Part shown: positions 1 to 55,970 of the stretch, piece after piece | Numbering within the stretch: the stretch's first letter is position 1 | How the letters are laid out: each line of letters begins with the position of its first letter | Origin: Heteronotia binoei | Lineage: Eukaryota | Direction of reading: 5' to 3' | Length of the DNA stretch: 64,000 nt | Assembly (NCBI RefSeq): GCF_032191835.1 | Contig: NC_083240.1 | Span: forward strand, 13,454,001 to 13,518,000 | The notes under the pieces: generated by a model | Database searches by the model: none | The model's input: only the letters and a program-made list of their open reading frames with translations | Told to the model about the DNA's origin: nothing | Program-made: the position numbers and the translations under genes

Positions 1-939
1 CTAATTACAACCATGGCCGAAGCCCTCAACATTACTCTTCCGTCGGACTCACCTAAGGTCTCTGACCTTGTACACGACCTCGTGCAAACGGACTTTCCAC
101 CGGGCTCGCTTCTTCCCATGCTCCCGGTACACCTCGAAGGCCTCCGCGAAACCTGGGACAAACCTGCCTCGGTTCCACCTACCGCGAAACGCTTTGACTC
201 TCTCTACAGAGTTCACGCTCCTGAGGCTAAATTTCTTGCTTCTCATCCGGCGCCCAACTCCATTATCGTGCACTCAGCCACTAAGGCTAAACCATCCAGA
301 CATCCGACACCTCCTGACCGTGAAGGCAGGAAATTGGACACCCTGGCAAGAAAAATTTTCGGCCTTGCCTCTACAAATTCTAAACTAAACAATTATTTAG
401 CCTACTTTTCAGCCTATGTCTACAACTTGGCTATCCAATTTACGCCTCTTATTTCCGCCCTTCCTGAACCCTCCCAAAGAACGGCCTCCGGCTTGGTATC
501 AGAGCTATCTAGAGTGTCCAAGCAACAGATCAACACCATACGCCATGCTGTTTCTTGCTCGTCCAGGGTTTTTGCATCCTCTGTTGCCTTACGACGCCAC
601 GCCTGGCTGAGGTCCACAAATCTACAACCGGACATTAAACAAAAAATAGAAGACCTTCCCTTCGATGGCCTCGGCCTTTTCCATGCTTCTACTGACGAAG
701 TCTTAGCCTCGGTGGATGATGGCCGCAAACGTGCCAAGCGCTTGGGAGTTTCCCAACCGTTTTCCCAGCGTCCCAACCGTGCAAAGCCCTGGAGACCATC
801 ATTTCAAAGACGCCAAGGGTCACCTAAGCGTACCGACTTCTGGAAGAGGAAGACTGGCCAGCAGAAACCGCAGTTTCAACAAAGACCGCGGTCACAACAG
901 GCCAAAAAACCCTCCCTTCCTTCTAAACAGTCTCTTTGA
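1..939 (+). CDS. DIRS gag (ORF1), 3' part; LAP2alpha-like domain
   Basis: Frame open from base 1 (LITTMAEALN..., matching NLITTMASALN in copy 2) to TGA 937-939; RRHAWLRS..IEDLPFDG motif typical of vertebrate DIRS gag. Confidence 0.9.
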   Translation, partial: LITTMAEALNITLPSDSPKVSDLVHDLVQTDFPPGSLLPMLPVHLEGLRETWDKPASVPPTAKRFDSLYRVHAPEAKFLASHPAPNSIIVHSATKAKPSRHPTPPDREGRKLDTLARKIFGLASTNSKLNNYLAYFSAYVYNLAIQFTPLISALPEPSQRTASGLVSELSRVSKQQINTIRHAVSCSSRVFASSVALRRHAWLRSTNLQPDIKQKIEDLPFDGLGLFHASTDEVLASVDDGRKRAKRLGVSQPFSQRPNRAKPWRPSFQRRQGSPKRTDFWKRKTGQQKPQFQQRPRSQQAKKPSLPSKQSL

Positions 940-2815
940 CTCCCCCGTACCGTTCTTCAACACACGTCTGTCACCGTTCCTTCCGACTTGGAACTCGATA
1001 ACAACCGACTCCTGGGTGCTGACCATCGTGCGTCTAGGTTACGCAATCGAGTTCATTTCTCCACCTCGCCACCACTATTTCACAGCTACCCCCCCCTCTC
1101 CCCTCCTCCGTCAGGAGATCCTGGACTTGCTCCACAAGGAAGCCATAGAGCCCGTTCCCCCCCTCCATCGGGGGACAGGCTTCTATTCAAGATACTTCCT
1201 TGTTCCCAAGAGGGATGGAGGAAGGCGTCCCATTCTAGATCTAAGGAAGCTCAACAAGCACATCGCATACAGGAAGTTCAGAATGATCTCCCTGCAGTCC
1301 ATTCTGCCTCTTATCCCCAGGAATTCCTGGATGGCTTCCCTAGACCTTCAGGACGCTTACTTCCATGTGACAATCCGACCTCAACATCGGAAGTATCTAC
1401 GATTTGCCATGGGCCGGGACCACTACCAATATGTGTCCCTACCTTTCGGCCTCTCCACTGCGCCCCGCGTGTTCACCAAGTGCATGGCGGTTGTGGCAGC
1501 TGCACTTCGCACTCGGAACATTCCAGTCTTCCCGTACATCGACGACTGGCTCCTGGTGGCCCCGACACAACAGCAATTGGAGCACAACCTCGACACAGCT
1601 CTCACTCTTCTGAGCTCCCTGGGTCTCCGCGTGAATACATCAAAGTCGCACCTCACACCTACCCAGGACCTCAAGTTTATAGGCGCCCTTCTCTGCAGCT
1701 CCCTGCATCGAGCTTTTCTCCCAGAGGATCGGGCATGCACTATTATTGCCCTAGCCAAGGCAGTTCAACAGCAACCCCGTCAGTCTGCGTTCACAATCCA
1801 ACGCCTGCTGGGCCTTATGGCTGCAACGACATCTGTCCTTCGATTTGCCAGACTGCGAATGCGACAACTGCAGATCTGGTTTGTTCGAGCCTACAACCCT
1901 CAAACGCAACCGCAAGCTGCTCTGCTCACTATCCCACAGAGAGCGCTTCTATCTCTCACGTGGTGGACTGTGCCCAACAATCTACTAGAGGGCAAGCCGT
2001 TTCTACCGACTTCCCCTACGACCACTATAACAACAGATGCCTCCAAGTGGGGATGGGGAGCCCACCTAGAGGACAAAACTGTCAGAGGGCTTTGGACGAC
2101 CACCGAGAGACTCATGCACATAAACTGCTTAGAACTGATCGCGGTGCACAGAGCTCTTCAATCATTTCTCCCATTAATAAAGGGCCAGCATGTCCAGATC
2201 TCTACGGACAACATGGCGACTGTTTATTATATAAACAAGCAAGGGGGCACCAGATCCCTCCGTCTCTGTCGTATAGCCGTACTGCTCTGGGAATGGTGTG
2301 TCAAACACAACATATTTATGACTGCCATTCATCTCCCCGGTGTGGAGAATACCTTGGCCGATTCCCTCAGCAGGTTTCGGATAGACGACCACGAATGGTC
2401 CATCACTCCGACCTACCTTCGCAGCATCTTCCGCTGCTTCGGAACACCCGAGGTGGACGCCTTTGCATCCAGGAACAATGCCAAGTGTCCTCAGTTTTAT
2501 TGCAGGAGGGGCAACGACGCCTTTCTGCACGATTGGACAGGTCCCCTTCACTACTTCTTTCCACCGACCCCCCTTCTGACACGTGTGTTGGTGAAAATAA
2601 CTCGGGATGGCACAGACTGCATCCTCATTGCGCCATGGTGGCCTCGGCAACCGTGGTTCACGAGGCTGCTTCAACTGTCACGCCACACTTACTGCCGGCT
2701 TCCTCCTGCGGGCGACCTCCTCTCTCAAGCCAACGGTCAGGTTCTTCATCACAACCCTCGGGTCCTGGCCCTGACCGCCTGGAGAATACGGCCACCTTCC
2801 TCTCTACAGAAGTAG
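716..2815 (+). CDS. DIRS pol ORF: reverse transcriptase, RNase H, Dam-like methyltransferase domain
   Basis: LDLQDAYFH, LPFGLSTAPRVF, YIDD (RT); TDAS, LELIA, STDN, ADSLSR (RNase H); DAFAS..FFPP..APWWPRQPWF (MT). True start uncertain (ATG 716 or frameshift from gag). Confidence 0.93.
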   Translation: MMAANVPSAWEFPNRFPSVPTVQSPGDHHFKDAKGHLSVPTSGRGRLASRNRSFNKDRGHNRPKNPPFLLNSLFDSPVPFFNTRLSPFLPTWNSITTDSWVLTIVRLGYAIEFISPPRHHYFTATPPSPLLRQEILDLLHKEAIEPVPPLHRGTGFYSRYFLVPKRDGGRRPILDLRKLNKHIAYRKFRMISLQSILPLIPRNSWMASLDLQDAYFHVTIRPQHRKYLRFAMGRDHYQYVSLPFGLSTAPRVFTKCMAVVAAALRTRNIPVFPYIDDWLLVAPTQQQLEHNLDTALTLLSSLGLRVNTSKSHLTPTQDLKFIGALLCSSLHRAFLPEDRACTIIALAKAVQQQPRQSAFTIQRLLGLMAATTSVLRFARLRMRQLQIWFVRAYNPQTQPQAALLTIPQRALLSLTWWTVPNNLLEGKPFLPTSPTTTITTDASKWGWGAHLEDKTVRGLWTTTERLMHINCLELIAVHRALQSFLPLIKGQHVQISTDNMATVYYINKQGGTRSLRLCRIAVLLWEWCVKHNIFMTAIHLPGVENTLADSLSRFRIDDHEWSITPTYLRSIFRCFGTPEVDAFASRNNAKCPQFYCRRGNDAFLHDWTGPLHYFFPPTPLLTRVLVKITRDGTDCILIAPWWPRQPWFTRLLQLSRHTYCRLPPAGDLLSQANGQVLHHNPRVLALTAWRIRPPSSLQK

Positions 2816-3813
2816 CCAATGTCATCCTCAACGCAAGAAAGCCTTCCACCAGACTTTCTTATCAGCGTAAATGGAAGCGCTTCTGTTCCTTTGCAACATC
2901 TTCTCAGCTGCAGCCGGAAACGGCTCCACTTCCCCTAATTCTGGACTACCTACTTTCCCTACAGAAATCCGGACTCTGTTATTCCTCTGTGAAGGTTCAC
3001 CTTTCTGCGGTTTCTGCTTTCCACAAGCCGATCGATGGCAAGACTGTGTTCTCCCATCCCTTATCAAAGTCCTTTCTCAAGGGCTTGTTGCACCTCAACC
3101 CACCGGTTAAACCATTTGTTCCGACATGGAGTTTATCGTTAGTCCTTTCCTGCTTGATGAAAGCCCCTTTTGAGCCTATGGCTACCATAGACCTCAATCT
3201 CCTTTCCTGGAAGACAGCATTACTCGTAGCCCTCACCTCGGGCAAACGGGCAAGTGACTTATGCGCTTTCCGCTACGATCCTCCCTACACCATTTTCCAC
3301 AAGGACAAAGTTGTTTTGCGACCGGACCCTGCGTTCCTGCCTAAGGTTGTCTCCCAGTTCCACTTATCAACCTCAACTTCTCTACCAACGTTCTTCTCCA
3401 ACCCATCCGACCAGGGACAACGAGCCCTGCATTCCTTGGACGTTAGAAGGGCGTTATCCTTCTACCTTGATCGTACACAACCTTTCCGTAAGGACCCTAA
3501 TCTGTTTGTGGCCTACGGAAACCCCCACAGGGGTCTTAAGATTTCTACCCAACGTCTGTCAAAGTGGGTAGTCAGTGCCATCAGGTTGTGCTACGAACTG
3601 GCTAAACAGCCTTTGCCCGACGGCCTTAAGGGCCACTCTACTAGAGCGGTCTCCACGTCTTCGGCCTTTCTACAAGGCGTGTCTCTAGAGGACATTTGTG
3701 CGGCTGCATCCTGGTCCTCTCCATCCACGTTCGTCTCCCATTATGCGATGGACGTTCGTGCGAGACGTGACGCCTCCTTCGGCCAAGCGGTCCTCAGATC
3801 CATCTTCCTCTGA
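940..3813 (+). CDS. DIRS ORF3: long frame overlapping pol, ending in the tyrosine recombinase (YR domain about 2810-3813)
   Basis: No stop from the codon after the gag TGA to 3813; YR catalytic motifs SGKRASDL (R), GHSTR (HxxR), ASW, SHY (Y). Confidence 0.9.
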   Translation, partial: LPRTVLQHTSVTVPSDLELDNNRLLGADHRASRLRNRVHFSTSPPLFHSYPPLSPPPSGDPGLAPQGSHRARSPPPSGDRLLFKILPCSQEGWRKASHSRSKEAQQAHRIQEVQNDLPAVHSASYPQEFLDGFPRPSGRLLPCDNPTSTSEVSTICHGPGPLPICVPTFRPLHCAPRVHQVHGGCGSCTSHSEHSSLPVHRRLAPGGPDTTAIGAQPRHSSHSSELPGSPREYIKVAPHTYPGPQVYRRPSLQLPASSFSPRGSGMHYYCPSQGSSTATPSVCVHNPTPAGPYGCNDICPSICQTANATTADLVCSSLQPSNATASCSAHYPTESASISHVVDCAQQSTRGQAVSTDFPYDHYNNRCLQVGMGSPPRGQNCQRALDDHRETHAHKLLRTDRGAQSSSIISPINKGPACPDLYGQHGDCLLYKQARGHQIPPSLSYSRTALGMVCQTQHIYDCHSSPRCGEYLGRFPQQVSDRRPRMVHHSDLPSQHLPLLRNTRGGRLCIQEQCQVSSVLLQEGQRRLSARLDRSPSLLLSTDPPSDTCVGENNSGWHRLHPHCAMVASATVVHEAASTVTPHLLPASSCGRPPLSSQRSGSSSQPSGPGPDRLENTATFLSTEVANVILNARKPSTRLSYQRKWKRFCSFATSSQLQPETAPLPLILDYLLSLQKSGLCYSSVKVHLSAVSAFHKPIDGKTVFSHPLSKSFLKGLLHLNPPVKPFVPTWSLSLVLSCLMKAPFEPMATIDLNLLSWKTALLVALTSGKRASDLCAFRYDPPYTIFHKDKVVLRPDPAFLPKVVSQFHLSTSTSLPTFFSNPSDQGQRALHSLDVRRALSFYLDRTQPFRKDPNLFVAYGNPHRGLKISTQRLSKWVVSAIRLCYELAKQPLPDGLKGHSTRAVSTSSAFLQGVSLEDICAAASWSSPSTFVSHYAMDVRARRDASFGQAVLRSIFL

Positions 3814-3821
3814 AGCCAGGG

Positions 3822-3930
3822 GTGAGTGCATCCGCTTCCATCTTTACACTGCAGACCACGTCACATGATGGTTGATTGCGTGATTGCATGTGATTTGATT
3901 TTTCCTGTGACTAACCTTTTTCTTTACCAG
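3822..3930 (+). other. Putative spliceosomal intron in DIRS 3' UTR (109 nt)
   Basis: G|GTGAGT donor, TGACTAAC branch at 3908-3915, pyrimidine tract, CAG acceptor; same signals in copy 2. Confidence 0.7.
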
Positions 3931-3963
3931 CACCCTCCTCCAGTCCATCCAGCTGGCTAGTCA

Positions 3964-4059
3964 CCCATGTGTGGGACTGCACAGAGACCACGAAGAAGAT
4001 AAACAGGTTGCTTACCTGTAACTGATGATCTTCGAGTGGTCATCTGTGCAGTCACACAC
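3964..4059 (+). repeat. DIRS internal complementary region (ICR), copy 1
   Basis: Reverse complement of right end joined to left end; identical to ICR of copy 2. Confidence 0.93.
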
Positions 4060-4127
4060 GCCCACCCAGCCTTCCCCGCTGCTGGCCTCTTGTGATTCTT
4101 CCGTAAACTTATAGTGTCATTGCCGGC

Positions 4128-4347
4128 GGCGGCTGGAAGAAACTGAGTGGAAGGGGCGCTCTCCCCCCGCTCCAGGCATGCGCGGTCGCTGCCTGCTCCC
4201 CAGAGCGGGAGGAAAGCGCGCCAAAAGACGTTATAAACGAGCTATTGGAGCTCCGAGGAATGGATCCGTTGCCTGCGGCAAGACCCATGTGTGTGACTGC
4301 ACAGATGACCACTCGAAGATCATCAGTTACAGGTAAGCAACCTGTTT
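4128..4347 (+). repeat. DIRS right inverted terminal repeat, copy 1
   Basis: Near-identical to 53763-53983; last ~59 nt complementary to ICR 4001-4059. Confidence 0.93.
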
Positions 4348-22219: not shown

Positions 22220-22895
22220 CAGGGCTTTTTTTTGTAGAAAAAGACCAGAATGAACTAATTTGCATATTAGGTCACACTCCCTGACATCACCCTTGTTTCA
22301 CACAGGGCTTTTTTGTAGAAAAAGCCCAGCAGGAACCCATTTGCTTATTAAACCACACCCCTGACATCACCCTTGTTTCACGCAGGACTTTTATGTAGAA
22401 AAGGACCAGCAGGAACCCATTTGCTTATTAAACCACACCCCTGACATCACCCTTGTTTCACGCAGGACTTTTATGTAGAAAAGGACCAGCAGGAACCCAT
22501 TTGCTTATTAAACCACACCCCTGACATCACCCTTGTTTCACACAGGGCTTTTTTTGTAGAAAAAGCCCAGCAGGAACCCATTTGCATATTAAGCCACACC
22601 CCCTGACATCACCCTTGTTTCACACAGGGCTTTTATGTAGAAAAAGCCCAGCAGGAACCCATTTGCATATTAAGCCACACACCCCTGACATCACCCTTGT
22701 TTCACGCAGGACTTTTATGTAGAAAAAGCCCAGCAGGAACTCATTTGCATATTAAGCCACACCCCCTGACAGCACCCTTGTTTCACCCAGGACTTTTATG
22801 CAGAAAAAGACCAGCAGGAACTCATTTGCATATTACGCCACACCCCCTGATACCAAGCCAGCCGAAACTGCATTCCTGCTCAAAAAAAAGCCCTG
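22220..22895 (+). repeat. Tandem array of 8 x 80-83 bp units formed from one end of a hAT MITE
   Basis: Unit starts at 22220, 22303, 22383, 22463, 22543, 22625, 22707, 22788; ends with AAAAAAAGCCCTG TIR; flanks CCCATACA/TCCGTACA. Confidence 0.92.
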
Positions 22896-23771: not shown

Positions 23772-24181
23772 TTATATTTCCTTTCTCCGGGGAAAACTCG
23801 CAAGGCAGGGCGAAAAGTTCAAGTCTTGCCTCCTCTTTGATCCCCAAGTCCAAGAAATGTTGTCCAGAGGAGCATTCAGCCATGCTGACCCTCGCCTCAG
23901 TGGGACTGACAAGTGAAGGTTTATTGCTTGGATGAGAACTTGATCCCACTGTAAAGCCAGGGGTGGAGGCTTCTGCCTTTATGTGGATGATCAGTATGAA
24001 GACCAATATGTCTCACCTAGGCCTGGGCGGGAAGTAGCAGATGTCCCTAGCAGCATCTTGAGCTCCTTCATCTTTATTTCCTAAAACTGCTTTGTCCCAG
24101 GCCAAGTTCTCTGCACTTCTTCTGCCTCTTGCCCGGCAACTGAAGGGTGTGCATGCGAGTGACACAGAAGGCACCCTTTCT

Positions 24182-24457
24182 GAGCCAGTTTGGTGTAGTG
24201 GTTAAGTGTGCGGACTCTTATCTGGGAGAACCGGGTTTGATTCCCCACTCCTCCACTTGTGCCTGCTGGAATGGCCTTGGGTCAGCCATAGCCCTGGCAG
24301 AGGTTGTCCTTGAAAGGGCAGCTGCTGTGAGAGCCCTCTCCAGCCCCACCCACCTCACAGGGTGTCTGTTGTGGGGGAGGAAGGTAAAGGAGATTGTGAG
24401 CCGCTCTGAGACTCTTCAGAGTGGAGGGCGGGATATAAATCCATTATCTTCTTCTTC
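24182..24457 (+). mobile_element. Squam3-like SINE, full length
   Basis: Intact A/B boxes, tail, (CTT)n. Confidence 0.9.
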
Positions 24458-27400: not shown

Positions 27401-27800
27401 CCATTTCTCACCATGCCACTTTGCCTCACAGGGAACAAACGATGCCTCATTTTTTAAAGCAATGTCTTAAGCGGGAACTTTTTTATTTTTGAAAAGCGCC
27501 TCGATTCAAGTGCTAATGACTCGGACTAATAAGAAACCAATCTCAGAGTTTGTCTTCCGGCCTTGTGGAAGGATGGAAGACGGGCGTGCAAACTGAACTC
27601 GAGAAGCCGGCTGGGAATCGAAACAGCCTGGGATGATGTCTGACTTTTAATTCAAAAACAATAGCTTTAGGGGGTATTTTTTTGCTGGATTTTGTTGTTG
27701 TCGTTGTTGTACTGGGACCTCGTAACTACTTGACCTCAGTCTCTTGGAGGAGAAGTGGAGATCTTGCACTCCAAACACAGAAGCGGCCTTTGCCTCCAAC

Positions 27801-27950
27801 ATGGATCTCTGCAGGTCTCCTTTGCTCCACAGGGATCCCTGCAAGTCTCCTTTGCTCCACAGGGATCTCTGCAGGTCCCCTTTGCTCCACAGGGATCTCT
27901 GCAGGTCTCCTTTGCGCCGCAGGGATCGCAGCAGATCTCCTGTGCTCCAG
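27801..27950 (+). repeat. Coding minisatellite, 5 x 30 bp (decapeptide [M/R]D[L/P/R][C/S][R/K]SP[L/V][L/R][H/R/Q])
   Basis: Directly visible exact-period tandem units. Confidence 0.95.
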
Positions 27951-28041: not shown

Positions 28042-29270
28042 GTAAGAGGGCAAAGGTGACAATAGTACCTTAAAGGCTTTGAGTGGTATTTATCCATCAA
28101 CAGCTGCGTCTAGTCTTAGTTGGGGTGGGATTTTACGAAAGGACACCGATTACTGGGTAATCCTCCAATCTCTTCTACTGATATATCTGTTATCGGCTAG
28201 GATGCTTCAAAAACTTTGTGGCTGGTAATGTTTGACCATTATTGTAGAACATGCTGGGAGTTCAGAGGGTAGCTGTGTTGGTCTGCAGTGAAAGTCCAGG
28301 AGTGCTATAGAGACCAGCAAGATTTCCGGGGTATCAGCTTTTGAGAGTCAAAAGCTCAGAGGCAGAGATCTGTCATCATGGAAGGCACCACAATAAGCCG
28401 CATGGCATGAGAGAGAAAGTGTTGACTCTCGAAAGCATGTACCCCCCCACCCCCCAAAAATTCTGTTGGTTTCCAAGGTGCTACAGGACTCAAATCTCAC
28501 TTGGCATTGTTAATCGAGGCAGATTTTTATAGCATTTTGTCCAGTTCAGGCGGTGAAATTGTAGGACGTGAGTAGTGTTCCCTATAAGCTGAGTCAGTGT
28601 GAGCCGGCTCACAGTTTTTTTAACTCCCAGCTCACACATGTTCATCTCAACTCAGGGAAAATTGCCCCAGAGCAAACTAATCGATGCAGTAGCTCACAAC
28701 TTTAATGCCAGCAGCTCACAAAGCAGAGGTTTGGCTCACAAGACTCCACAGTTTAGCGGGAACCCTGGATGTGAGTGTTCCCTCTCTATTTTCAGCCTCC
28801 GGAAGGGAGAACCATGTAAAACACTCTGGATTCCTTGGAGACAAAGCAGGACAAAAAGGGATGAGATTCCCCTGCGTTTTACACATGAACATGGAGGCAC
28901 ACTTGTGGTACCCCTATATTGATACCGACCATCCCTCCATCACACATTGTGGAAGGTTGTCCTCAGTATCCTATAGCGATTTCAAATGCCCTTGCAATTG
29001 ACTTAAAGAAGCCAAAGAGGTGTTTGTTCTTCAGGTTAAAGATCCATCAGAAAAAGTGAAATTGCTTAGGTGCCTCCAGTTCTTATTTACGAGGACAGAA
29101 CCAAGTAAGATCAAGATGGGTCACCGTGTGAGTCTGTCTGTAGCAGGAGAAAAGAGCAAGAGCAACGTAAAGGCTAACAAAAGTTGTGGCAGGGGAGGAG
29201 TTTTCGTAAGTGGCTGCTCACTTCTTCAAGACAAGAGCAAGAGTCCAGTGGCATCATAAAGGCTAACAGC

Positions 29271-29541
29271 TTGGTGTAGTGGTTAAGAGTGTGGACTCTT
29301 ATCTGGGAGAACCAGGTTTGATTCTCCACTCCTCCACTTACAGCTGCTGGAATGGCCTTGGGTCAGCCATAGCTCTCATAGGAGTTGTCCTTGAATGGGC
29401 AGCTTCTGGGAGAGCTCTCTCAGCCCCACCCACCTCACAAGAGGGGGTCTGTTGTGGGGAGAGAAGATATAGGAGATTGTAAGCCACTCTGAGTCTCTGA
29501 TTCAGAGAGAAGGGCAGGGTATAAATCTGCAGTCTTCTTCT
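29271..29541 (+). mobile_element. Squam3-like SINE inserted into a probable Penelope-like remnant (about 29140-29652)
   Basis: Family match; CTAACA duplicated on both sides; identity of the host repeat is from recollection only. Confidence 0.8.
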
Positions 29542-32138: not shown

Positions 32139-32835
32139 TTGCATGCAAAAAATTTTGATTTCTAGCAAGGGAAAGCAGATGAATGTGTTCAGTAGGGCAA
32201 AACCATGTGCTTTCCATGCAGAAGGCCCCGCATTCTATTACTGCTGCCTCCAGTTTATTGGTTTTGTTTAGGACATTTGTTTTTTACCCCACCCTTTGTT
32301 CAAAGAGGTCATGGGAGCACGCAGCATTCTCCCTTCCTCTTTTTTGTCCTCACAATAACTCCATGCGGTAGGTTAGTCTGAGAGACAGTGTAACTGCAGC
32401 CCACGATCACCCAGCAGGTTTTGTGGCAGACTGGGTGTCCCAGATCATAGTGGGACATGCAACCCCCACCCCACTCCCACTGGTTGTTTCTCAGGTAGCA
32501 AGACTGGGAAAGGTCTGAGAGCCAGTTGGCATAAACAGTGAGGCTTGGTCTGATTGGCAGCTTCTGGGGTTTTCTGGTGGGAAAGATTTGTAGTTTGAGG
32601 TAGGCCCATTTTGCACATTATGAATTCTTTGGGTTCAGAGCCATGTGTGAACTGATGCAAACTACTTCCACACACGTGCCACTCAGAGACACAAAAGTAC
32701 AGACGGGGTGTTGATTTCCCAAGCCTCACTGGACTTCTGACACAATACAAACTCCCATCACATGCGCAGGAGGTAACAATTGGTGTGAACTGTGATGCAG
32801 ATTCTCCAAGGCCATGTCTGCTCACTTTCACTTTC

Positions 32836-33085
32836 AGAGCCAGTTTGGTGTAGTGGTTAAGTGTGCAGACTCTTATCTGGGAGAACCGGGTTTGATTCCC
32901 CACTCCTCCACTTGCACCTGCTGGAATGGCCTTGGGTCAGCCATAGCTCTGGCAGAGGTTGTCCTTGAAAGGGCAGCTGCTGTGAGAGCCCTCTCAGCCC
33001 CACCCACCTCACAGGGTGTTTGTTGTGGGGGAGGAAGGTAAAGGAGATTGTGAGCCTCTCTGAGACTCTTCGGAGTGGAGGGCGG
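32836..33085 (+). mobile_element. Squam3-like SINE, tail lost in gap
   Basis: Sequence match to family. Confidence 0.9.
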
Positions 33086-39475: not shown

Positions 39476-39776
39476 GGTGTAGTGGTTAAGTGCATGGTGT
39501 AGTGGTTAAGTGCATGGACTCTTATCTGGGTGAACCGGGTTTGATTCCTCACTCCTTCACTCGCAGCTGCTGAAATGGTCTTGGTCATCCATAGCTCTTG
39601 CAAGAGTTGTCCTTGAAAGGGCAGCTGCTGTAAGAGCTCTCTCAGCCCCACCTACCTCACAAGTGTCTGTTGTGTGTGTGTGTGGGGGGGGAAGGTAAAG
39701 GAGATTGTGACCGCTCGGAGACTCTGAGATTCAGAGTATAGGGTGGGATATAAATCCAATATCATCATCTTCTTCT
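39476..39776 (+). mobile_element. Squam3-like SINE with duplicated 5' 20-mer
   Basis: GGTGTAGTGGTTAAGTGCAT occurs twice in tandem. Confidence 0.88.
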
Positions 39777-47677: not shown

Positions 47678-47875
47678 ATCTTCTTCGTGGTCTCTGTGCA
47701 GTCCCACACATGGGGTCTTGCCGCAGGCAACGGATCCGTACCTCGGAGCTCCAATAGCTCGTTTATAACGTCTTTTGGCGCGCTTTCCTCCCGCCCTGGG
47801 GAGCAGGCAGCGACTGCGCATGCCTGGAGCGGGGGGAGAGCGCCTATTCCACTCAGTTTCTTCCCTTCCGCCGCC
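47678..47875 (+). repeat. DIRS left ITR
   Basis: About 47707-47864 is the exact reverse complement of about 53770-53927; first ~37 nt complementary to ICR 53598-53634. Confidence 0.95.
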
Positions 47876-48097
47876 CGGACAACACCTACCTCGTTGCGTT
47901 CCTCCTCTGGCTCGTCTCTTGGTATCGTACTACTCCTCCCTTTTCTTCACTATTTACTCTATTTTTTCCTTCTTCGTCCCATTAATATAAAAAAAAAAAA
48001 AAAAAAGGTTACCCGATTCTGCGCTTCAGCCTTTTTTCTTTCTACCCCCCCCCCCTCTTCTCGTCTCTCCCTTCCCTCCTTCCCCTGTCCGGAACGA

Positions 48098-50614
48098 ATG
48101 GAAGGGAAAATCACCTTTAAAAGGTGCAGGCAGTGTGGTTCTAAAATTCCGTCCTCGGACGGTCATTCACTCTGCCTTTTTTGCTTGGGGGAATCCCACA
48201 GAACCGATAACTGCCACCACTGTGCTTGCTTCGGCAAGCAGGCGCGCAAGAACAGAGCAGCCCGCCTTCGTAGTTTCCTCATGGAATCCTCTCTACGCGC
48301 AGTGTCTACTTCAGATCCGCCGCCTCCCCCACTGAGAGCGGGAGATTCGGCAACTTCGGCCCTTCCTACCGTACCTAGGAAGCATAAGTCCGATAAAAAG
48401 GCTTCTAAGCACTCTGAGGGTCACAAGGCGCCCAAACAGACTCGTCATGGCGAATCCAGCCTGTCGAAGCCACACCACTCGGGCCCGAAAACCTCCAGCC
48501 CGACCACTTCGGCGCCTAAGAAGCATCACGACCCGTCGGCTTCTACCTCCGTGCATACTTCCGCCTTTGCTACGGCTGCGCAATCGTCCGCATCGACCGC
48601 CCAAACGGCCTCCGCGCAATCGAATCCGATTCTACCTATTGAACTCTCGGCTCCTTCCGATGTTATCTCGGAAATGCCTCGCCTCACTCAACCCTCTATC
48701 GAAGTGATTCCGATTGGCTCGAGATCGCCCTCGGTTCACAGCCTTCCTCCTGATGATATCCTCGACACCGAGGCTCCACTTCTCGGACCCGAATCCTTCC
48801 TCGACGTCACAACGCCAGTGCAGAAGGACATTACGACTCCATTGCTTAAAGACACGGCAGCACCACTGCTAAAGGAGTCCTCGACACAAGTTTCCTCTCA
48901 TCGGCTCCGACCTGGATCCCCACGGGCCCGCTCTCGCTTGCGGTCTCCGCTTCGTCCGAGATCTCCGTTCAGAGATCGTCCCTACTCTCCGCATCGATCT
49001 CCGCGTCGTCACGACTACCAGGACCCTCGCCGTGATCGCTCCCGGTCCCGGTATGGTGACTACCTCCGTGACTACCCACGAGACCGTTCTCCTTCTCGGT
49101 CTCCATCACCTCGACTTCACTCGCGCTACCATCGGTACCTGCGTTCACCATCGCACCACAGCTATAGGCATCTCTCCGACTTCGATCCCGAGCCTCTCCC
49201 CAGAGATGTTTATATGCCTCGACTCAGGGATTATTATTCACCCGGAACCCGCGACTACTACCGTTCACGCGACCAACGATCTCCTTATTACCGCCACCTG
49301 TCACCAGATTGCTACGATGATTACCAACACTACTACTCTCCCCGAGAAGAACCAAACCCTCGCACCCGAGATGATGCGGCAGCCCTTCGGACCCGAGACG
49401 TCTTCGACTCCCAGACTGCACCTGTGCAGCCTCCCGTGATTCCTCGAAACCGAGATTCTTCCAGAACAGCATCCGCATCGGTTTCCAAGCCACCGGCTTC
49501 GCCACTCAAGCGTCCCCGGGACCCTTCACCTGTTGAACCCAAGTCTCCACAACGTCCCCTCTCGGCTTCGGATAGAGACACTTCTGATCATTCCGACTCC
49601 GAGGAGGCCCCTGCCTCACCCTCATCCGACCAGCCTCCTAGGCTTTCACCATCCGACAGTTCTAAGGCCTACCTGAATCTCATTACAACCATGGCTTCCG
49701 CACTAAACATCCCTATGTCCTCCGACTCACCAAAAGTTTCGGACGTGGTCCACGACCTAGTCCGCGCAGATTTTCCAGATAGCTCCACGCTTCCTATGCT
49801 CCCTGTACACCTTGAAGGCCTCCAGGAAGCCTGGGAGAAGCCGGCTTCGATCCCTACACTTTCTCGCCGCCTGGATTCTCTTTATAGGGTGCACGTAGCT
49901 GACTGCAAATTCCTCGCATCTCACCCGGCACCCAACTCTGTCGTGGTTCATTCCGCCACCAAGACCAAACAATCTCGCCACCCCGTTCCTCCGGACCGGG
50001 AGGGTCGAAAATTGGACACTCTGGCTAAGAAAATCTACAGTTTTTCTTCAACCAACTCCAAGTTGAACAATTATTTAGCCTACTTTGCGGCTTACTCCTT
50101 CAACTTGGCTAACCAGATTACCCCTCATATTGCATCCATGCCTGACTCATCTCAGAAGACTGTGTCGTCTCTCGTCTCTGAGCTCTCCCGTGTCAATAAA
50201 CAACAAATCAACTCTATCCGCCATGCGGTCTCCTGTTCTTCTCGAATTTTTGCAACTTCGGTGGCTTTACGTCGCCACGCCTGGCTGCGCTCTACCAACT
50301 TGCAGCCGGACATCAAACAGCGTATAGAAGACCTTCCCTTCGACGGTCTGGGACTCTTCCATGCGTCCACGGACGAGGTCCTTGCATCCGTCGATGACGG
50401 CCGCAAAAGAGCCAAACGACTTGGTGTCACACAACCAACCTCACTGCCCTCTAATAGGCAGAGACCGTGGAAGCCATCCTTCCAACGCCGCCAGCGGTCT
50501 CCCAAGTCTCAAGATTTCTGGAAAAGGAAACCTCTCCCAAAGCAACCTTTTCATCAGAGGCCACGGGCCCAACCTTCTAAGAAACAATCTCAGACAGGCA
50601 AGCAGTCTCTTTGA
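48098..50614 (+). CDS. DIRS gag (838 aa): N-terminal Cys/His zinc finger, RS/RP-rich low-complexity middle, LAP2alpha-like C-terminus
   Basis: ATG 48098; Cx2Cx9Hx2Cx2Cx4Hx4Cx2C; aligns with copy 1 gag. Confidence 0.9.
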   Translation: MEGKITFKRCRQCGSKIPSSDGHSLCLFCLGESHRTDNCHHCACFGKQARKNRAARLRSFLMESSLRAVSTSDPPPPPLRAGDSATSALPTVPRKHKSDKKASKHSEGHKAPKQTRHGESSLSKPHHSGPKTSSPTTSAPKKHHDPSASTSVHTSAFATAAQSSASTAQTASAQSNPILPIELSAPSDVISEMPRLTQPSIEVIPIGSRSPSVHSLPPDDILDTEAPLLGPESFLDVTTPVQKDITTPLLKDTAAPLLKESSTQVSSHRLRPGSPRARSRLRSPLRPRSPFRDRPYSPHRSPRRHDYQDPRRDRSRSRYGDYLRDYPRDRSPSRSPSPRLHSRYHRYLRSPSHHSYRHLSDFDPEPLPRDVYMPRLRDYYSPGTRDYYRSRDQRSPYYRHLSPDCYDDYQHYYSPREEPNPRTRDDAAALRTRDVFDSQTAPVQPPVIPRNRDSSRTASASVSKPPASPLKRPRDPSPVEPKSPQRPLSASDRDTSDHSDSEEAPASPSSDQPPRLSPSDSSKAYLNLITTMASALNIPMSSDSPKVSDVVHDLVRADFPDSSTLPMLPVHLEGLQEAWEKPASIPTLSRRLDSLYRVHVADCKFLASHPAPNSVVVHSATKTKQSRHPVPPDREGRKLDTLAKKIYSFSSTNSKLNNYLAYFAAYSFNLANQITPHIASMPDSSQKTVSSLVSELSRVNKQQINSIRHAVSCSSRIFATSVALRRHAWLRSTNLQPDIKQRIEDLPFDGLGLFHASTDEVLASVDDGRKRAKRLGVTQPTSLPSNRQRPWKPSFQRRQRSPKSQDFWKRKPLPKQPFHQRPRAQPSKKQSQTGKQSL

Positions 50615-52484
50615 CTCCCCCATCAGGCATACCAGACTATCCCCTTTTTACCCGAGTTGGAGTTCCATCACCACCGACTCTTGGGTCCTCACCATCGTGC
50701 GTCTAGGTTACGCAATAGAGTTCGTTTCGCCACCACACCACCACCACTTCATAGCCACACCTCCATCTGCTCTCTTGCAGCAGGAAATTCTGGACTTGCT
50801 CCAGAAGAATGCCATAGAACCCGTTCCTCCTCAACATCGAGGCACGGGATTCTACTCAAGATACTTCCTGGTCCCCAAACGCGATGGAGGAAAGCGCCCT
50901 ATCCTAGATCTTCGGAAGCTGAACAATTTCATCGAATGCAGGAAGTTCAGAATGATCTCCCTACACACCATCCTGCCTCTTATTCCCAGGAACTCCTGGA
51001 TGGCTTCCCTAGATCTTCAGGACGCTTACTTCCACGTGACTATCCGACCTCATCATCGGAAGTATTTAAGATTCGCTATGGGGCAAGACCACTTCCAGTA
51101 CGTATCCCTGCCCTTTGGCCTCTCCACCGCACCAAGGGTATTCACCAAGTGTATGGCGGTGGTGGCAGCGGCTCTCAGACTCCGAGACATCACAGTCTTC
51201 CCATATATAGACGACTGGCTTCTCATAGCACCGACTCAGCATCGTTTGCAGACCAATATCAGCACAACGCTCTCCCTCCTCGATTCCCTGGGCCTTCGTG
51301 TGAACACATCCAAATCCCATCTCGAGCCCACGCAGGACATCAAGTTTATAGGAGCTCTCCTTCGCACCTCTCTTCACCGTGCTTTCCTTCCAGAGGATCG
51401 AGCAATCACCATCATCACCTTAGCCAGGTCAATTCAACGACAGCCCTGCCAGTCTGCATTCACAATACAACGCCTGCTGGGCCTCATGGCCGCCACGACT
51501 TCTGTCATCCACTTTGCCAAGCTACGGATGCGACATCTACAGCTCTGGTTTGTGAGAGCCTACCATCCTCTGTTGCAACCGCAGAGCACCCTACTCACGG
51601 TTCCCCAGAGAGCTCTCTCATCCCTTACCTGGTGGACGGTACCCAGCAATCTTCTCGCGGGCATGCCGTTCCTACCGATGCCTCCAGTAGCTGTTGTGAC
51701 AACAGATGCCTCAAAGTGGGGATGGGGAGCCCACTTACAGGACAAGACCGTCAGAGGCCTTTGGACGCCCTCCGAGAGGGCCATGCACATAAACTGCTTA
51801 GAACTGATTGCCGTACACAGGGCCCTCTTATCCTTTCTTCCCCTGATCAACGGGAGCCATGTCCAGATCTCAACGGACAACATGGCAACTGTCTATTACA
51901 TCAACAAGCAAGGGGGAACCAAGTCTCTCAGACTTTGCCGTATAGCCATCGTGCTCTGGGAATGGTGTCTGGAGCACAACATCCATTTGACCGCCGTTCA
52001 CCTCCCAGGCGTAGACAATGTTCTGGCCGACTCTCTGAGCAGGTTTCGTCTGGACGACCACGAGTGGTCCCTCAATCCAACCTACCTCCGACGCATTTTC
52101 AGATGCTTCGGAACACCCATGGTGGATGCCTTTGCTTCACGGGACAATGCCAAATGCCCACGCTATTTCTCCAGAAGGGAGAACGACGCCTTCCTACACA
52201 GATGGACGGGCCCCCTCCACTACATCTTCCCACCAACCCCCCTACTGACTCGGGTTCTGACGAAGATCACACGAGACGGCACGGACTGCATCCTGGTAGC
52301 CCCCTGGTGGCCACGGCAACCATGGTTTACGAGACTTCTCCAGTTATCTCATCACACCTACCGTCGCCTTCCTCTCGTGAGCGACCTCTTGTCCCAAGCC
52401 AATGGTCAGATATTGCACCACAATCCTCAAGTACTGGCCCTAACGGCCTGGAGAATTCGACCTCCCACCTCTCCGCAGAGGTAG
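50394..52484 (+). CDS. DIRS pol ORF: RT, RNase H, MT
   Basis: Same intact motifs as copy 1; ATG 50394 is homologous to ATG 716 (frame also open from 50361); true start uncertain. Confidence 0.92.
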   Translation: MTAAKEPNDLVSHNQPHCPLIGRDRGSHPSNAASGLPSLKISGKGNLSQSNLFIRGHGPNLLRNNLRQASSLFDSPIRHTRLSPFYPSWSSITTDSWVLTIVRLGYAIEFVSPPHHHHFIATPPSALLQQEILDLLQKNAIEPVPPQHRGTGFYSRYFLVPKRDGGKRPILDLRKLNNFIECRKFRMISLHTILPLIPRNSWMASLDLQDAYFHVTIRPHHRKYLRFAMGQDHFQYVSLPFGLSTAPRVFTKCMAVVAAALRLRDITVFPYIDDWLLIAPTQHRLQTNISTTLSLLDSLGLRVNTSKSHLEPTQDIKFIGALLRTSLHRAFLPEDRAITIITLARSIQRQPCQSAFTIQRLLGLMAATTSVIHFAKLRMRHLQLWFVRAYHPLLQPQSTLLTVPQRALSSLTWWTVPSNLLAGMPFLPMPPVAVVTTDASKWGWGAHLQDKTVRGLWTPSERAMHINCLELIAVHRALLSFLPLINGSHVQISTDNMATVYYINKQGGTKSLRLCRIAIVLWEWCLEHNIHLTAVHLPGVDNVLADSLSRFRLDDHEWSLNPTYLRRIFRCFGTPMVDAFASRDNAKCPRYFSRRENDAFLHRWTGPLHYIFPPTPLLTRVLTKITRDGTDCILVAPWWPRQPWFTRLLQLSHHTYRRLPLVSDLLSQANGQILHHNPQVLALTAWRIRPPTSPQR

Positions 52485-53482
52485 CCCACGTTATTCTAAA
52501 CGCTAGGAAGCCCTCCACAAGGCTTTCGTACCAAAGGAAATGGAAACGCTTCTGTTCATTCGCGACTGCTAACCATCTACTCCCAGAATCAGTACCTCTC
52601 AATATGATCCTGGAGTATTTACTTTCCCTACAGAAATCAGGACTCTGTTACTCATCCTTGAAAGTTCATCTCTCTGCCATCTCTGCGTTCCACAACCCGG
52701 TAGACGGCAAAACAGTTTTTTCTCATTCCTTGTCCAAGTCTTTTCTCAAGGGCATGTTGCACCTCAATCCACCCGTTAAACCCCTTGTCCCAACTTGGAG
52801 TTTATCCCTAGTTCTTTCCTCGCTTATGAAAGCACCATTTGAACCTATGGCTACCATAGACCTCAGTCTCCTCTCCTGGAAGACAGCATTGCTGATTGCC
52901 CTTACCTCTGGAAAACGGGCAAGTGACTTATGCGCCTTCCGCCACGACCCTCCCTACACCATTTTTCACAAGGAAAAGGTTGTCCTCAGACCGGACCCTG
53001 CGTTCCTTCCTAAGGTTGTCTCCCAGTTCCACTTATCGACTGCGACCTCTCTGCCGACCTTTTTTCCAAACCCAACAGATCACGGACAACGGGCCCTGCA
53101 TTCGCTGGATGCAAGAAGGGCTTTATCCTTCTACCTTGATCGTACACGGCCTTTCCGTAAGGACCCTAATCTATTTGTGGCATACGGAAACCCCTGCAGG
53201 GGACTCAAAATCTCTACCCAGAGACTATCTAAATGGGTAGTTAGCGCCATTAGGCTGTGCTACGAACTGGCTAAGCAGCCTCTGCCCGAAGGCCTTAAGG
53301 CTCACTCTACCAGAGCGGTCTCGACGTCTTCGGCTTTTTTGCACGGCGTCTCCCTAGAGGACATCTGTGCTGCTGCATCGTGGTCCTCTCCCTCCACGTT
53401 CGTCTCCCATTATGCGTTGGACGTTCGTGCAAGACGTGACGCCTCCTTCGGCCAAGCGGTCCTCAGATCCATCTTTCACTGA
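50615..53482 (+). CDS. DIRS ORF3 / tyrosine recombinase
   Basis: Open from the codon after the gag TGA; R, AHSTR, W, Y catalytic residues intact. Confidence 0.9.
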   Translation, partial: LPHQAYQTIPFLPELEFHHHRLLGPHHRASRLRNRVRFATTPPPLHSHTSICSLAAGNSGLAPEECHRTRSSSTSRHGILLKILPGPQTRWRKAPYPRSSEAEQFHRMQEVQNDLPTHHPASYSQELLDGFPRSSGRLLPRDYPTSSSEVFKIRYGARPLPVRIPALWPLHRTKGIHQVYGGGGSGSQTPRHHSLPIYRRLASHSTDSASFADQYQHNALPPRFPGPSCEHIQIPSRAHAGHQVYRSSPSHLSSPCFPSRGSSNHHHHLSQVNSTTALPVCIHNTTPAGPHGRHDFCHPLCQATDATSTALVCESLPSSVATAEHPTHGSPESSLIPYLVDGTQQSSRGHAVPTDASSSCCDNRCLKVGMGSPLTGQDRQRPLDALREGHAHKLLRTDCRTQGPLILSSPDQREPCPDLNGQHGNCLLHQQARGNQVSQTLPYSHRALGMVSGAQHPFDRRSPPRRRQCSGRLSEQVSSGRPRVVPQSNLPPTHFQMLRNTHGGCLCFTGQCQMPTLFLQKGERRLPTQMDGPPPLHLPTNPPTDSGSDEDHTRRHGLHPGSPLVATATMVYETSPVISSHLPSPSSRERPLVPSQWSDIAPQSSSTGPNGLENSTSHLSAEVAHVILNARKPSTRLSYQRKWKRFCSFATANHLLPESVPLNMILEYLLSLQKSGLCYSSLKVHLSAISAFHNPVDGKTVFSHSLSKSFLKGMLHLNPPVKPLVPTWSLSLVLSSLMKAPFEPMATIDLSLLSWKTALLIALTSGKRASDLCAFRHDPPYTIFHKEKVVLRPDPAFLPKVVSQFHLSTATSLPTFFPNPTDHGQRALHSLDARRALSFYLDRTRPFRKDPNLFVAYGNPCRGLKISTQRLSKWVVSAIRLCYELAKQPLPEGLKAHSTRAVSTSSAFLHGVSLEDICAAASWSSPSTFVSHYALDVRARRDASFGQAVLRSIFH

Positions 53483-53488
53483 AATGGG

Positions 53489-53564
53489 GTGAGTGTATCC
53501 GCTTATGTCTCTATGTCATACAATCTTTGCCTTAGGCCATGTGACTAACCTTTTTCTTCTCCAG
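53489..53564 (+). other. Putative spliceosomal intron in DIRS 3' UTR (76 nt)
   Basis: G|GTGAGT, TGACTAAC at 53542-53549, pyrimidine tract, CAG. Confidence 0.7.
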
Positions 53565-53597
53565 CACCCTCCTCCAGGACACTTAGCTGGCTAGTCA

Positions 53598-53693
53598 CCC
53601 ATGTGTGGGACTGCACAGAGACCACGAAGAAGATAAACAGGTTGCTTACCTGTAACTGATGATCTTCGAGTGGTCATCTGTGCAGTCACACAC
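53598..53693 (+). repeat. DIRS ICR, copy 2
   Basis: Complementary to both element ends; junction at 53634/53635. Confidence 0.95.
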
Positions 53694-53762
53694 GCCCACC
53701 CAGCCTTCCCCGCTGCTGGCTTTTGGTACTTCTTGTCTTACCTTTTTAGTCTCTCTGCCAGT

Positions 53763-53983
53763 GGCGGCTGGAAGAAACTGAGTGGAATAGGCGCTCTCCC
53801 CCCGCTCCAGGCATGCGCAGTCGCTGCCTGCTCCCCAGGGCGGGAGGAAAGCGCGCCAAAAGACGTTATAAACGAGCTATTGGAGCTCCGAGGTACGGAT
53901 CCGTTGCCTGCGGCAAGACCCCATGTGTGTGACTGCACAGATGACCACTCGAAGATCATCAGTTACAGGTAAGCAACCTGTTT
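53763..53983 (+). repeat. DIRS right ITR with terminal extension
   Basis: Inverted match to left ITR. Confidence 0.95.
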
Positions 53984-55563: not shown

Positions 55564-55685
55564 GGTGGGGGGAAGAGCCTTGCTCAGCTCTTGTGGACTG
55601 AATTTCTACCCCAACTTTGAGCTCCATACCCAAACATAAGCGGGAAGTCTTGTCAAGACTTTCCAAAGCTGCTCAGGCTAGGACA

Positions 55686-55970
55686 GAGAGCCAGTTTGGT
55701 GTAGTGGTCAAGTGCATGGACTCTTATCTGGGAGAACCAGGTTTGATTCCCCACTCCTCCACTTGCACCTGCTGGAATGGCCTCGGGTCAGCCATAGCTC
55801 TGGCAGAGGTTGTCCTTGAAAGGGCAGCTGCTGTGAGAGCCCTCTCAGCACCACCCACCTCACAGGGTGTCTGTTGTGGGTGGAGGAGATCTAGGAGATT
55901 GTAAGCCGCTCTGAGTCTCTGATTCAGGGAGAAGGGTGGGGTATAAAACTGCAATTCTTTTTCTTCTTCT
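55686..55970 (+). mobile_element. Squam3-like SINE, full length
   Basis: Sequence match to family. Confidence 0.9.

What the first reader, a model, noticed from the sequence alone, without database searches (positions are those of the whole stretch)
53483..53577. A retrotransposon retaining a spliceosomal intron just after its last stop codon
Seen: both copies have GGG|GTGAGTG 8 nt (copy 1, 3822) or 6 nt (copy 2, 53489) after the YR stop. Both end with the shared TGTGACTAACCTTTTTCTT(TA/CT)CCAG|CACCCTCCTCCAG. The interior differs in sequence and length (109 versus 76 nt), the pattern expected of a real intron. Established: retrotransposition normally removes introns, and stops more than 50-55 nt upstream of a junction trigger NMD. 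Inference: the unspliced RNA is the replication template. On the spliced RNA the junction is NMD-neutral for ribosomes stopping at the YR stop but would mark termination at the gag or pol stop as premature. This could link splicing to the recoding switch or serve export. Introns in some YR retrotransposons have been reported, so novelty for this family needs a literature check.
Basis: partly seen in the sequence, partly recalled or inferred. Interest (0 to 1): 0.78.

Follow-up and report, generated by a model that had tools for sequence, protein, structure and literature searches.

The report
Retained intron in lizard DIRS retrotransposon
Two diverged, apparently active copies of a lizard-type DIRS jumping gene keep a short stretch with textbook splicing signals just after their last gene; it is very probably a real intron that survives copying through RNA, which is unusual for retrotransposons, but no spliced RNA has been seen.

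Summary
Both DIRS1-like copies carry G|GTGAGT 6 or 8 nt after the recombinase (YR) stop. Both also carry TGACTAAC, a pyrimidine tract and CAG, giving candidate introns at 53489-53564 (76 nt) and 3822-3930 (109 nt).

- **Rarity:** a composite intron pattern hits only these two sites in the window, and nothing in 68 kb of related loci. About 0.07 hits per window are expected by chance.
- **Selection:** the copies diverged under strong purifying selection (YR dN/dS 0.07, dS 0.89) with no indels over about 3.8 kb of coding sequence.
- **Conservation pattern:** the candidate intron's interior is randomised and differs in length, yet its first 16 and last 25 nt are kept.
- **Relatives:** removing it leaves 39-41 nt between the stop and the internal complementary region (ICR). 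Six intron-less relatives have about 32-49 nt there.
- **Caution:** the sister clade has a long spacer at the same place without canonical signals. The spacer may therefore be older than the splice signals.

No closer copies and no RNA data were reachable, so splicing itself is untested. The NMD/recoding idea remains speculation.

Other agents of this scan noted the same feature on other pieces of this genome (s1-340654, s1-325748). I found no paper describing it in DIRS elements. It is moderately interesting: a new variant of a known kind.

The parts
47678..53983 (+). Copy 2: complete DIRS1-like element (about 6.3 kb)
   Evidence: The inverted terminal repeats 47693-47864 and 53770-53941 are 99% complementary. 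The termini were read and match the ICR. ORFs are listed. Pfam finds RVT_1, RT_RNaseH, a Dam-like methyltransferase and Phage_int_SAM_1.
1..4347 (+). Copy 1: same family, 5' part cut off by the window start
   Evidence: It is collinear with 49679-53983 at 69-84% identity, with no indels in the coding sequence. It has the same ORFs and Pfam hits.
52487..53482 (+). YR (tyrosine recombinase) coding part not overlapped by pol, copy 2; stop TGA at 53480-53482
   Evidence: Translation. Homologues are named Tyr recombinase domain proteins. Against copy 1, dN/dS is 0.07.
53489..53564 (+). Candidate 3'UTR intron, copy 2 (76 nt): donor GGG|GTGAGT, branch TGACTAAC (A at 53548), pyrimidine tract, CAG|C
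3822..3930 (+). Candidate 3'UTR intron, copy 1 (109 nt): same donor, branch (A at 3914), tract and CAG|C
53565..53597 (+). Short exon-side box (CACCCTCCTCC, then TAGCTGGCTAGTCA) between the acceptor and the ICR. It holds a second CCAG at 53574-53577.
   Evidence: The box follows the stop directly in intron-less relatives L006 and L013. The conserved second acceptor-like AG was found.
53598..53693 (+). Internal complementary region (ICR): reverse complement of the left terminus, a 24-nt centre, then the reverse complement of the right terminus
   Evidence: Read against the termini. It is 100% identical between the copies and folds as a long hairpin with z-score -4.6.
3964..4059 (+). ICR of copy 1
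53965..53981 (+). Right-terminal palindromic core ACAGGT-AAGCA-ACCTGT containing CAG|GTAAGC. It is the only other conserved donor-like site in the element.
   Evidence: The motif is conserved in relatives L001, L002 and L006.

Best explanation
The block is a genuine U2-type GT-AG spliceosomal intron in the 3'UTR of one lizard DIRS1-like family. It lies between the recombinase stop and the ICR.

Proposed mechanism:
- Pol II transcripts of the element are spliced there in part.
- The spliced pool acts as mRNA. Its exon junction is 6-8 nt past the last stop, so it is harmless to ribosomes that reach that stop.
- Terminal-intron effects on 3'-end formation, export and translation are the likeliest benefit.
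- Only unspliced transcripts found lasting lineages. Either they are preferred as reverse-transcription templates, or intron-less progeny are poorer masters.

Shown: the anatomy, its rarity, the selective conservation of the ends, and retention through long functional divergence. Inferred: excision, the split into two RNA pools, and any benefit.
For: 1. Signals. The donor G|GTGAGT can pair with U1 from -1 to +6. The branch GACUAAC matches the optimal UACUAAC at 6 of 7 positions. The last 14 nt before YAG hold 12-13 pyrimidines, followed by CAG. Lengths of 76 and 109 nt suit intron definition (consensus knowledge is my own).
2. Rarity. These are the only two composite hits in the window on both strands, with 0.07 expected. 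There are none in 67.6 kb of related loci.
3. Uniqueness within the element. Only two donor-like sites are conserved across the shared 4.3 kb: this one and the terminal core.
4. Selective conservation. Four-fold sites in YR are only 60% identical and dS is 0.89. The intron interior is no more alike than shuffles and differs by 33 nt. The intron ends match 15/16 and 23/25. All large indels of the 4.3-kb alignment fall in the interior.
5. Functional divergence. dN/dS of 0.07, intact ORFs, and 99% complementary ITRs in copy 2 show that the block passed through many RNA-mediated generations.
6. Relatives. Without the block, the stop-to-ICR distance is 39 or 41 nt. Six relatives without the block have about 32-49 nt.
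7. Origin. The interior is T-rich and matches no other repeat. No Rfam family matches.
8. Template feasibility. DIRS-1 of Dictyostelium reverse-transcribes both spliced and unspliced tagged RNAs, so unspliced templates are possible.
Against: - No RNA evidence of any kind.
- Only two related copies could be read, which is one evolutionary event.
- The sister clade (L003, L008; support 97/96) has 123-159-nt spacers at the same place without canonical signals. A spacer is therefore tolerated there without splicing, and the splice signals may be secondary.
- L013 has CTCCAG-CACCCTCCTCCAG directly after its stop with no insert. Relatives are thus not exact copies of the spliced form.
- The whole 3' non-coding region is constrained (ICR 100% identical, ITR about 95%), so conserved ends are not specific to splicing. 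The 5' block is conserved to +16, further than a donor needs.
- The branch A lies only 16 nt from the AG.
- The exon side of the donor is GG, not the consensus. On a rough PWM the donor ranks at the 99.4th percentile of 3216 GT sites.
- In Dictyostelium DIRS-1, an intron placed near the ICR was spliced and lost on retrotransposition. Retention here therefore needs a special explanation.
Confidence: 0.6

Rival explanations
1. The block is a non-spliced spacer. This family and its sister clade tolerate a variable insert between the YR stop and the ICR. The conserved ends are cis-elements of replication, for example pairing partners of the box before the ICR. They look like splice signals by coincidence.
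For: The sister clade has 123-159-nt spacers and Sceloporus has 353 nt at the same place, all without canonical signals. The whole 3' region is under constraint. Predicted folds pair GUGACUA (branch) or GGGUGA (donor) with the conserved UAGUCACCC box. The 5' block is conserved beyond +6.
Against: A joint occurrence of a strong donor, a near-optimal branch, a pyrimidine tract and YAG in the right order and spacing is expected about 0.07 times per 128 kb. It is found nowhere else in 263 kb scanned. A vertebrate spliceosome would be expected to act on such a short intron in a Pol II transcript (my knowledge).
Confidence: 0.2
2. The signals recruit U1 and U2AF without productive splicing. They might suppress premature cleavage and polyadenylation, or define the terminal exon so that the transcript ends in the right repeat.
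For: Relatives without the block all keep a lone donor-like GGTRAG box just before the ICR, and a consensus CAG|GTAAGC at the right terminus. Donor-like motifs are therefore a family trait even where no intron exists.
Against: The GGTRAG box co-varies with the ICR centre in L002 (GGTGAGA with TCTCACC). That points to a role in replication or pairing rather than in U1 binding. A complete branch, tract and AG set is not needed for U1-only effects.
Confidence: 0.08
3. One reading: the intron is spliced, and its exon junction complex makes termination at the gag or pol stop look premature. Spliced RNA would then survive only when ribosomes recode through to the YR stop, coupling RNA stability to recoding.
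For: The geometry fits the 50-55-nt rule: the YR stop is 6-8 nt, the pol stop about 1 kb and the gag stop about 2.9 kb upstream of the junction. Gag and YR share one frame separated by a single TGA.
Against: Most ribosomes should stop at gag. The spliced RNA would then mostly be destroyed, which looks like a cost rather than a function. Nothing here tests this.
Confidence: 0.08
4. The intron protects the element from HUSH-type silencing of long intronless transcription units.
For: HUSH targets intronless retroelements, and introns counteract it (PMC8770142).
Against: The same paper reports that protection grows with intron length. It also reports that efficiently spliced short stuffers flanked by splice signals do not protect. 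This intron is 76-109 nt in a transcript of about 6 kb.
Confidence: 0.03

Closest known systems
Penelope-like elements (Penelope of Drosophila virilis, Chlamys-3_cRei)
   Same: These retroelements keep a short spliceosomal intron through retrotransposition. Penelope has a 75-bp intron in an untranslated region. PMC8557442 calls this ability highly unusual among retroelements.
   Different: Their intron is in the 5'UTR and overlaps an internal promoter. The enzymes differ (PLE reverse transcriptase plus GIY-YIG endonuclease, target-primed). Here the intron is in the 3'UTR of a tyrosine-recombinase element, next to the ICR.
Spliced subgenomic RNAs of LTR retrotransposons (BARE1; also copia and Ogre, from my own knowledge)
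   Same: Unspliced RNA is the replication template and a spliced pool serves translation. BARE uses distinct RNA pools (PMC3735527).
   Different: Their splicing removes coding sequence and changes which protein is made. Here the intron lies after the last stop and changes no protein.
Dictyostelium DIRS-1 tagged with an artificial intron (PMC7192593)
   Same: It belongs to the same order of elements. An intron placed near the ICR is recognised by the host, and both spliced and unspliced cDNAs can arise.
   Different: That intron was engineered and was lost in new copies. Here a natural intron-like block is retained in two diverged lineages.
Short-UTR DIRS1-like families of other squamates (Phrynocephalus L006, Varanus L009, Eublepharis L002, metagenome contigs L001 and L012, Logan contig L005)
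   Same: They share the gene order, the CACC..TCC box, the ICR and the terminal core.
   Different: The stop-to-ICR distance is about 32-49 nt with no intron-like block. They carry a GGTRAG box that this family lacks.
Ngaro element of the same genome (scan note s1-325722)
   Same: Another YR retrotransposon reported to use splicing.
   Different: There, splicing is said to join coding parts to make an esterase. I did not test this.

Membership tests
DIRS1-like tyrosine-recombinase retrotransposon (order DIRS) | Reverse transcriptase and RNase H, with a methyltransferase-like domain | tested here: met
   RVT_1 scores E 2e-22 and 1.7e-23, and RT_RNaseH 1.5e-07 and 5.6e-08, all above the Pfam cut-offs. 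The Dam-like hit (E 1e-4 to 4e-4) is below its cut-off.
DIRS1-like tyrosine-recombinase retrotransposon (order DIRS) | Tyrosine recombinase instead of a DDE integrase | tested here: met
   Phage_int_SAM_1 gives a weak hit. There are 501 homologues at E<=1e-20, several named Tyr recombinase domain proteins. No integrase or protease family was reported by Pfam.
DIRS1-like tyrosine-recombinase retrotransposon (order DIRS) | Inverted terminal repeats | tested here: met
   Arms of 172 nt, 99% complementary, at 47693-47864 and 53770-53941.
DIRS1-like tyrosine-recombinase retrotransposon (order DIRS) | Internal complementary region matching both termini | tested here: met
   53598-53693 is the reverse complement of the left start, plus a centre, plus the reverse complement of the right end.
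U2-type GT-AG spliceosomal intron | 5' splice site close to the MAG|GTRAGT consensus | tested here: met
   GGG|GTGAGT in both copies. It ranks at the 99.4th percentile of GT sites on a rough PWM recalled from memory. The exon positions -3 and -2 are not consensus.
U2-type GT-AG spliceosomal intron | Branch site yUnAy followed by a pyrimidine tract and YAG | tested here: met
   TGACTAAC, then 12-13 of 14 pyrimidines, then CAG, identical in both copies apart from 2 nt. The branch A is 16 nt from the AG, at the short end of the usual range.
U2-type GT-AG spliceosomal intron | Length above the vertebrate minimum | tested here: met
   76 and 109 nt. The minimum of about 65-70 nt is from my own knowledge.
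U2-type GT-AG spliceosomal intron | Ends constrained, interior free to vary | tested here: met
   Ends match 15/16 and 23/25, against 60% identity at four-fold sites. The interior is no better than shuffles.
U2-type GT-AG spliceosomal intron | Precise excision seen in RNA | not testable with these tools
   No transcript data for this species. No close copies were found in the protein database (best 65% identity) or in the DNA collections.
U2-type GT-AG spliceosomal intron | Precise presence/absence at the GT..AG borders among relatives | tested here: inconclusive
   Removing the block gives the stop-to-ICR spacing of intron-less relatives. L013, however, keeps CTCCAG before the box, and the sister clade has a non-canonical spacer.
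Penelope-like intron-retaining retroelements | PLE-type reverse transcriptase with GIY-YIG endonuclease | tested here: not met
   Pfam shows an LTR-type RT/RNase H and a tyrosine recombinase, not GIY-YIG. The resemblance is functional only.

The most novel reading that the evidence does not exclude
A tyrosine-recombinase retrotransposon acquired a true spliceosomal intron in its 3'UTR and keeps it by design. Splicing would sort its transcripts into a translated pool and an unspliced replicating pool. The exon junction next to the last stop would tie the stability of the spliced RNA to how far ribosomes recode past the gag stop.
Probability: 0.15. Interest if true: 0.75.

Novelty: new variant of a known kind. 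Interest (0 to 1): 0.55.

Why it matters
Copying through RNA normally erases introns, so a retrotransposon that keeps one tells us which RNA it copies. If this block is spliced, the family would be a natural, testable case in a vertebrate of separate RNA pools for translation and replication in DIRS elements, whose replication is still poorly understood. It would extend intron retention, described as highly unusual and typical of Penelope-like elements, to a second, unrelated order. It also provides a built-in marker: the ratio of intron-bearing to precisely intron-less copies in the genome measures how often spliced RNA is reverse-transcribed.

Tried and rejected
- **Closer copies.** Two protein searches, with the whole YR and with the last 120 residues, gave at best 56-65% identity. 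An exact 21-nt ICR word found nothing in metagenome or viral contigs, and one chance hit in a bacterial MAG. A look-up by sequence in the scan's own notes was blank.
- **Gag-only splice.** I tested whether the strong acceptor at 53564 pairs with a donor after gag, as in copia or BARE. No other donor-like site is conserved between the copies except the terminal core.
- **Intron spanning the ICR.** I considered an intron running from the GGTRAG box of relatives to an AG beyond the ICR. Only the donor-like box is conserved, and it co-varies with the ICR centre. I read it as a replication motif. Scan note s1-321123 reached the same negative verdict.
- **Captured repeat.** The interior has no other copy in the window or in the fetched loci.
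- **Known RNA family.** Rfam gives nothing near any gathering score. The bacterial-type promoter/terminator scan is not meaningful here.
- **HUSH evasion.** Judged unlikely after reading PMC8770142.
- **Literature.** Eight searches found no description of an intron inside a DIRS element. Four DIRS/Ngaro surveys (PMC3266345, PMC2685390, PMC9210276, PMC3783388) do not contain the word intron. The Goodwin and Poulter papers and the Poulter and Butler review are not held, so prior mention there cannot be excluded.
- The joined (spliced) sequence was not built, searched or folded. Only the unspliced stretches were used, by reference.

Full report
**What is there**

The window holds two copies of one DIRS1-like tyrosine-recombinase retrotransposon. 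Tyrosine recombinase is abbreviated YR below.
- Copy 2 is complete, about 47678-53983 on the + strand.
  - Its 172-nt inverted terminal repeats are 99% complementary.
  - It has a gag ORF and a pol ORF with RVT_1, RT_RNaseH and a Dam-like methyltransferase.
  - A third frame ends in a YR.
- Copy 1 (1 to about 4347) is cut off by the window start.
- At 53598-53693 lies the internal complementary region (ICR). It is the reverse complement of the left terminus, a 24-nt centre, and the reverse complement of the right terminus.
- The genome looks squamate. The nearest YR proteins come from Varanus, Eublepharis, Sceloporus, Anolis and Phrynocephalus, at only 48-65% identity.

**The observation**

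It holds exactly as described.

| Feature | Copy 2 | Copy 1 |
|---|---|---|
| YR stop (TGA) | 53480-53482 | 3811-3813 |
| Gap before the donor | 6 nt | 8 nt |
| Donor GGG\|GTGAGT, intron start | 53489 | 3822 |
| Branch A in TGACTAAC | 53548 | 3914 |
| Acceptor AG of CAG\|C | 53563-53564 | 3929-3930 |
| Length | 76 nt | 109 nt |

In both copies the branch A lies 16 nt before the AG.

**Is it more than chance?**
- I scanned for a composite pattern: G|GTRAGT, 60-200 nt, CTRAY 12-45 nt before the end, at least 11 of 12 pyrimidines, then YAG.
  - It occurs at these two places only, on either strand of the 64 kb.
  - Markov-1 simulations give 0.07 hits per window.
  - A looser version found nothing in 67.6 kb of related squamate loci.
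- Only two donor-like sites are conserved between the copies over the 4.3 kb they share. One is this donor; the other is CAG|GTAAGC inside the right-terminal palindromic core.
- The interior matches no other repeat, and no Rfam family matches the region.
- Two caveats apply. The pattern was defined after seeing the site. The two copies are homologous, so this is one event.

**Conservation pattern**
- The copies are 69-84% identical across the coding sequence, with essentially no indels.
- In the YR part not overlapped by pol, dN/dS is 0.07, dS is 0.89, and four-fold sites are 60% identical. The two lineages therefore separated long ago and stayed functional, which means many rounds of copying through RNA.
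- Against that background:
  - The first 16 intron nt match 15/16 and the last 25 match 23/25.
  - The interior differs by 33 nt in length.
  - The interior aligns no better than shuffles; 354 of 500 shuffles score as well.
- That is what selection on splice signals predicts. It is not specific, though:
  - The ICR is 100% identical and the terminal repeat about 95% identical.
  - The 5' block is conserved to +16, further than a donor needs.

**Relatives**

I fetched the stop-to-ICR region from eleven related families. L007's YR stop was not resolved, because the called ORF runs on into the ICR.

| Group | Loci | Stop-to-ICR distance | Notes |
|---|---|---|---|
| Short UTR | L001, L002, L005, L006, L009, L012 | about 32-49 nt | No intron-like block; CACC..TCC box, then a GGTRAG box |
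| This family, block removed | copies 2 and 1 | 39 and 41 nt | Falls inside the short-UTR range |
| Long spacer | L003, L008, L010 | 159, 123 and 353 nt | No canonical signals |
| Short, incomplete | L013 | contig ends before the ICR | CTCCAG-CACCCTCCTCCAG directly after its stop |

- A YR tree puts the two window copies together (support 100/99). Their sister is L003 plus L008 (97/96), and the next branch is L002 plus L013.
- The simplest history is as follows.
  - An insert arose at this spot in the ancestor of the four-row clade.
  - Full splice signals are then either specific to this family or have decayed in the broken L003 and L008 copies.
- L013 suggests that the acceptor AG may predate the insert.
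- Intron loss is a one-step event for a retroelement, so parsimony is weak here.

**Mechanism**

A vertebrate spliceosome should act on a short intron with a strong donor, a near-optimal branch site and a U-rich tract. That expectation is my own knowledge, not a result.
- My best reading (0.6) is a real intron spliced from part of the transcripts.
- Splicing changes no protein and leaves the ICR intact, so spliced RNA should still be copyable.
  - In Dictyostelium DIRS-1, an engineered intron near the ICR was spliced, and intron-free copies integrated.
  - Unspliced cDNAs were seen with another placement (PMC7192593).
- Retention in two lineages therefore implies one of two things.
  - Lasting lineages start from unspliced RNA.
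  - Or intron-less progeny are poorer masters.
- The likeliest benefit is the general effect of a terminal intron on 3'-end formation, export and translation. This is inference.

The idea applies the 50-55-nt rule correctly. Gag and YR share one frame with a single TGA between them. The pol and gag stops lie about 1 kb and 2.9 kb upstream of the junction. However, most ribosomes should stop at gag, which makes this look like a cost.

**HUSH evasion**

This is unlikely. Protection scales with intron length, and short spliced stuffers do not protect (PMC8770142).

**Non-splicing roles**

Predicted folds let the conserved UAGUCACCC box pair with either the donor or the branch. This keeps a non-splicing cis-role open (0.2).

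**Known or new?**
- BARE shows separate RNA pools with a spliced subgenomic RNA (PMC3735527).
- I found no description of an intron in a DIRS element. Four surveys of DIRS/Ngaro elements never use the word. The key Goodwin/Poulter papers are not held.
- Other agents of this scan noted the same feature on other pieces of this genome, with 74 and 116 letters (s1-340654 and s1-325748). I could not read those copies. They are leads, not independent evidence.

**Limits**
- No RNA data and no closer copies were reachable.
- The 555 N in the window were left untouched.

**Verdict**

This is a probable retained 3'UTR intron in a DIRS1-like family. It is a new variant of a known kind, of moderate interest, and awaits one junction read.

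Noticed in passing
window 50612-53482 and 934-3813: In both copies the gag frame continues past a single TGA, with no further stop, for about 955 codons to the YR stop. It overlaps the whole pol ORF, which sits in the +1 frame. Other notes of this scan treat this as a recoding hub.
   Followed up: partly
window 53965-53981 and 4329-4345; ICR centre 53634-53657: The right terminus carries the palindromic core ACAGGT-AAGCA-ACCTGT, which contains a consensus donor CAG|GTAAGC. Its complement in the ICR centre (UUGCUUACCUGU) resembles the 5' end of U1 snRNA. The core is conserved in L001, L002 and L006 and looks like a recombinase core site. Read-through transcripts could splice from it into the host gene.
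   Followed up: partly
L001 4020-4030, L002 7390-7400, L005 1178-1188, L006 6350-6360, L009 about 7240-7250, L012 663-673: All six short-UTR relatives have a GGTRAG box just before the ICR that repeats the terminal motif. In L002 the box and the ICR centre change together (GGTGAGA with TCTCACC, against GGTAAGC with GCTTACC elsewhere). The window family and the long-spacer families lack the box.
   Followed up: partly
window 49871-50560 versus 52487-53479: Divergence between the two copies is uneven. Four-fold sites are 29% identical in gag (saturated) but 60% identical in YR, and the 3' non-coding part is 90-100% identical. This could reflect mosaic ancestry by recombination or very different constraint.
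   Followed up: no
window 5117-5352, 7308-7543, 12076-12311, 24179-24414, 29260-29495, 32834-33069, 39483-39661, 55685-55920 and inverted copies: There are many copies of a tRNA-derived SINE of about 235-250 nt (start ..GGTGTAGTGGTTAAG..), 74-99% alike. This fits a squamate genome.
   Followed up: no
window 22228-22847 and 27799-27948: Two tandem arrays, with units of about 81 nt (7 copies) and 30 nt (4-5 copies).
   Followed up: no
L010 6001-7986: The annotated Sceloporus product (649 aa) does not equal the straight translation of its range. The model therefore contains a small gap or frameshift correction inside a DIRS YR gene.
   Followed up: no
L011 2655-2675: There is a single exact 21-nt match of the ICR word in a Saprospiraceae MAG. 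My rough estimate is that about 0.3 such matches are expected by chance in 596 Gb, so I take it as chance.
   Followed up: no
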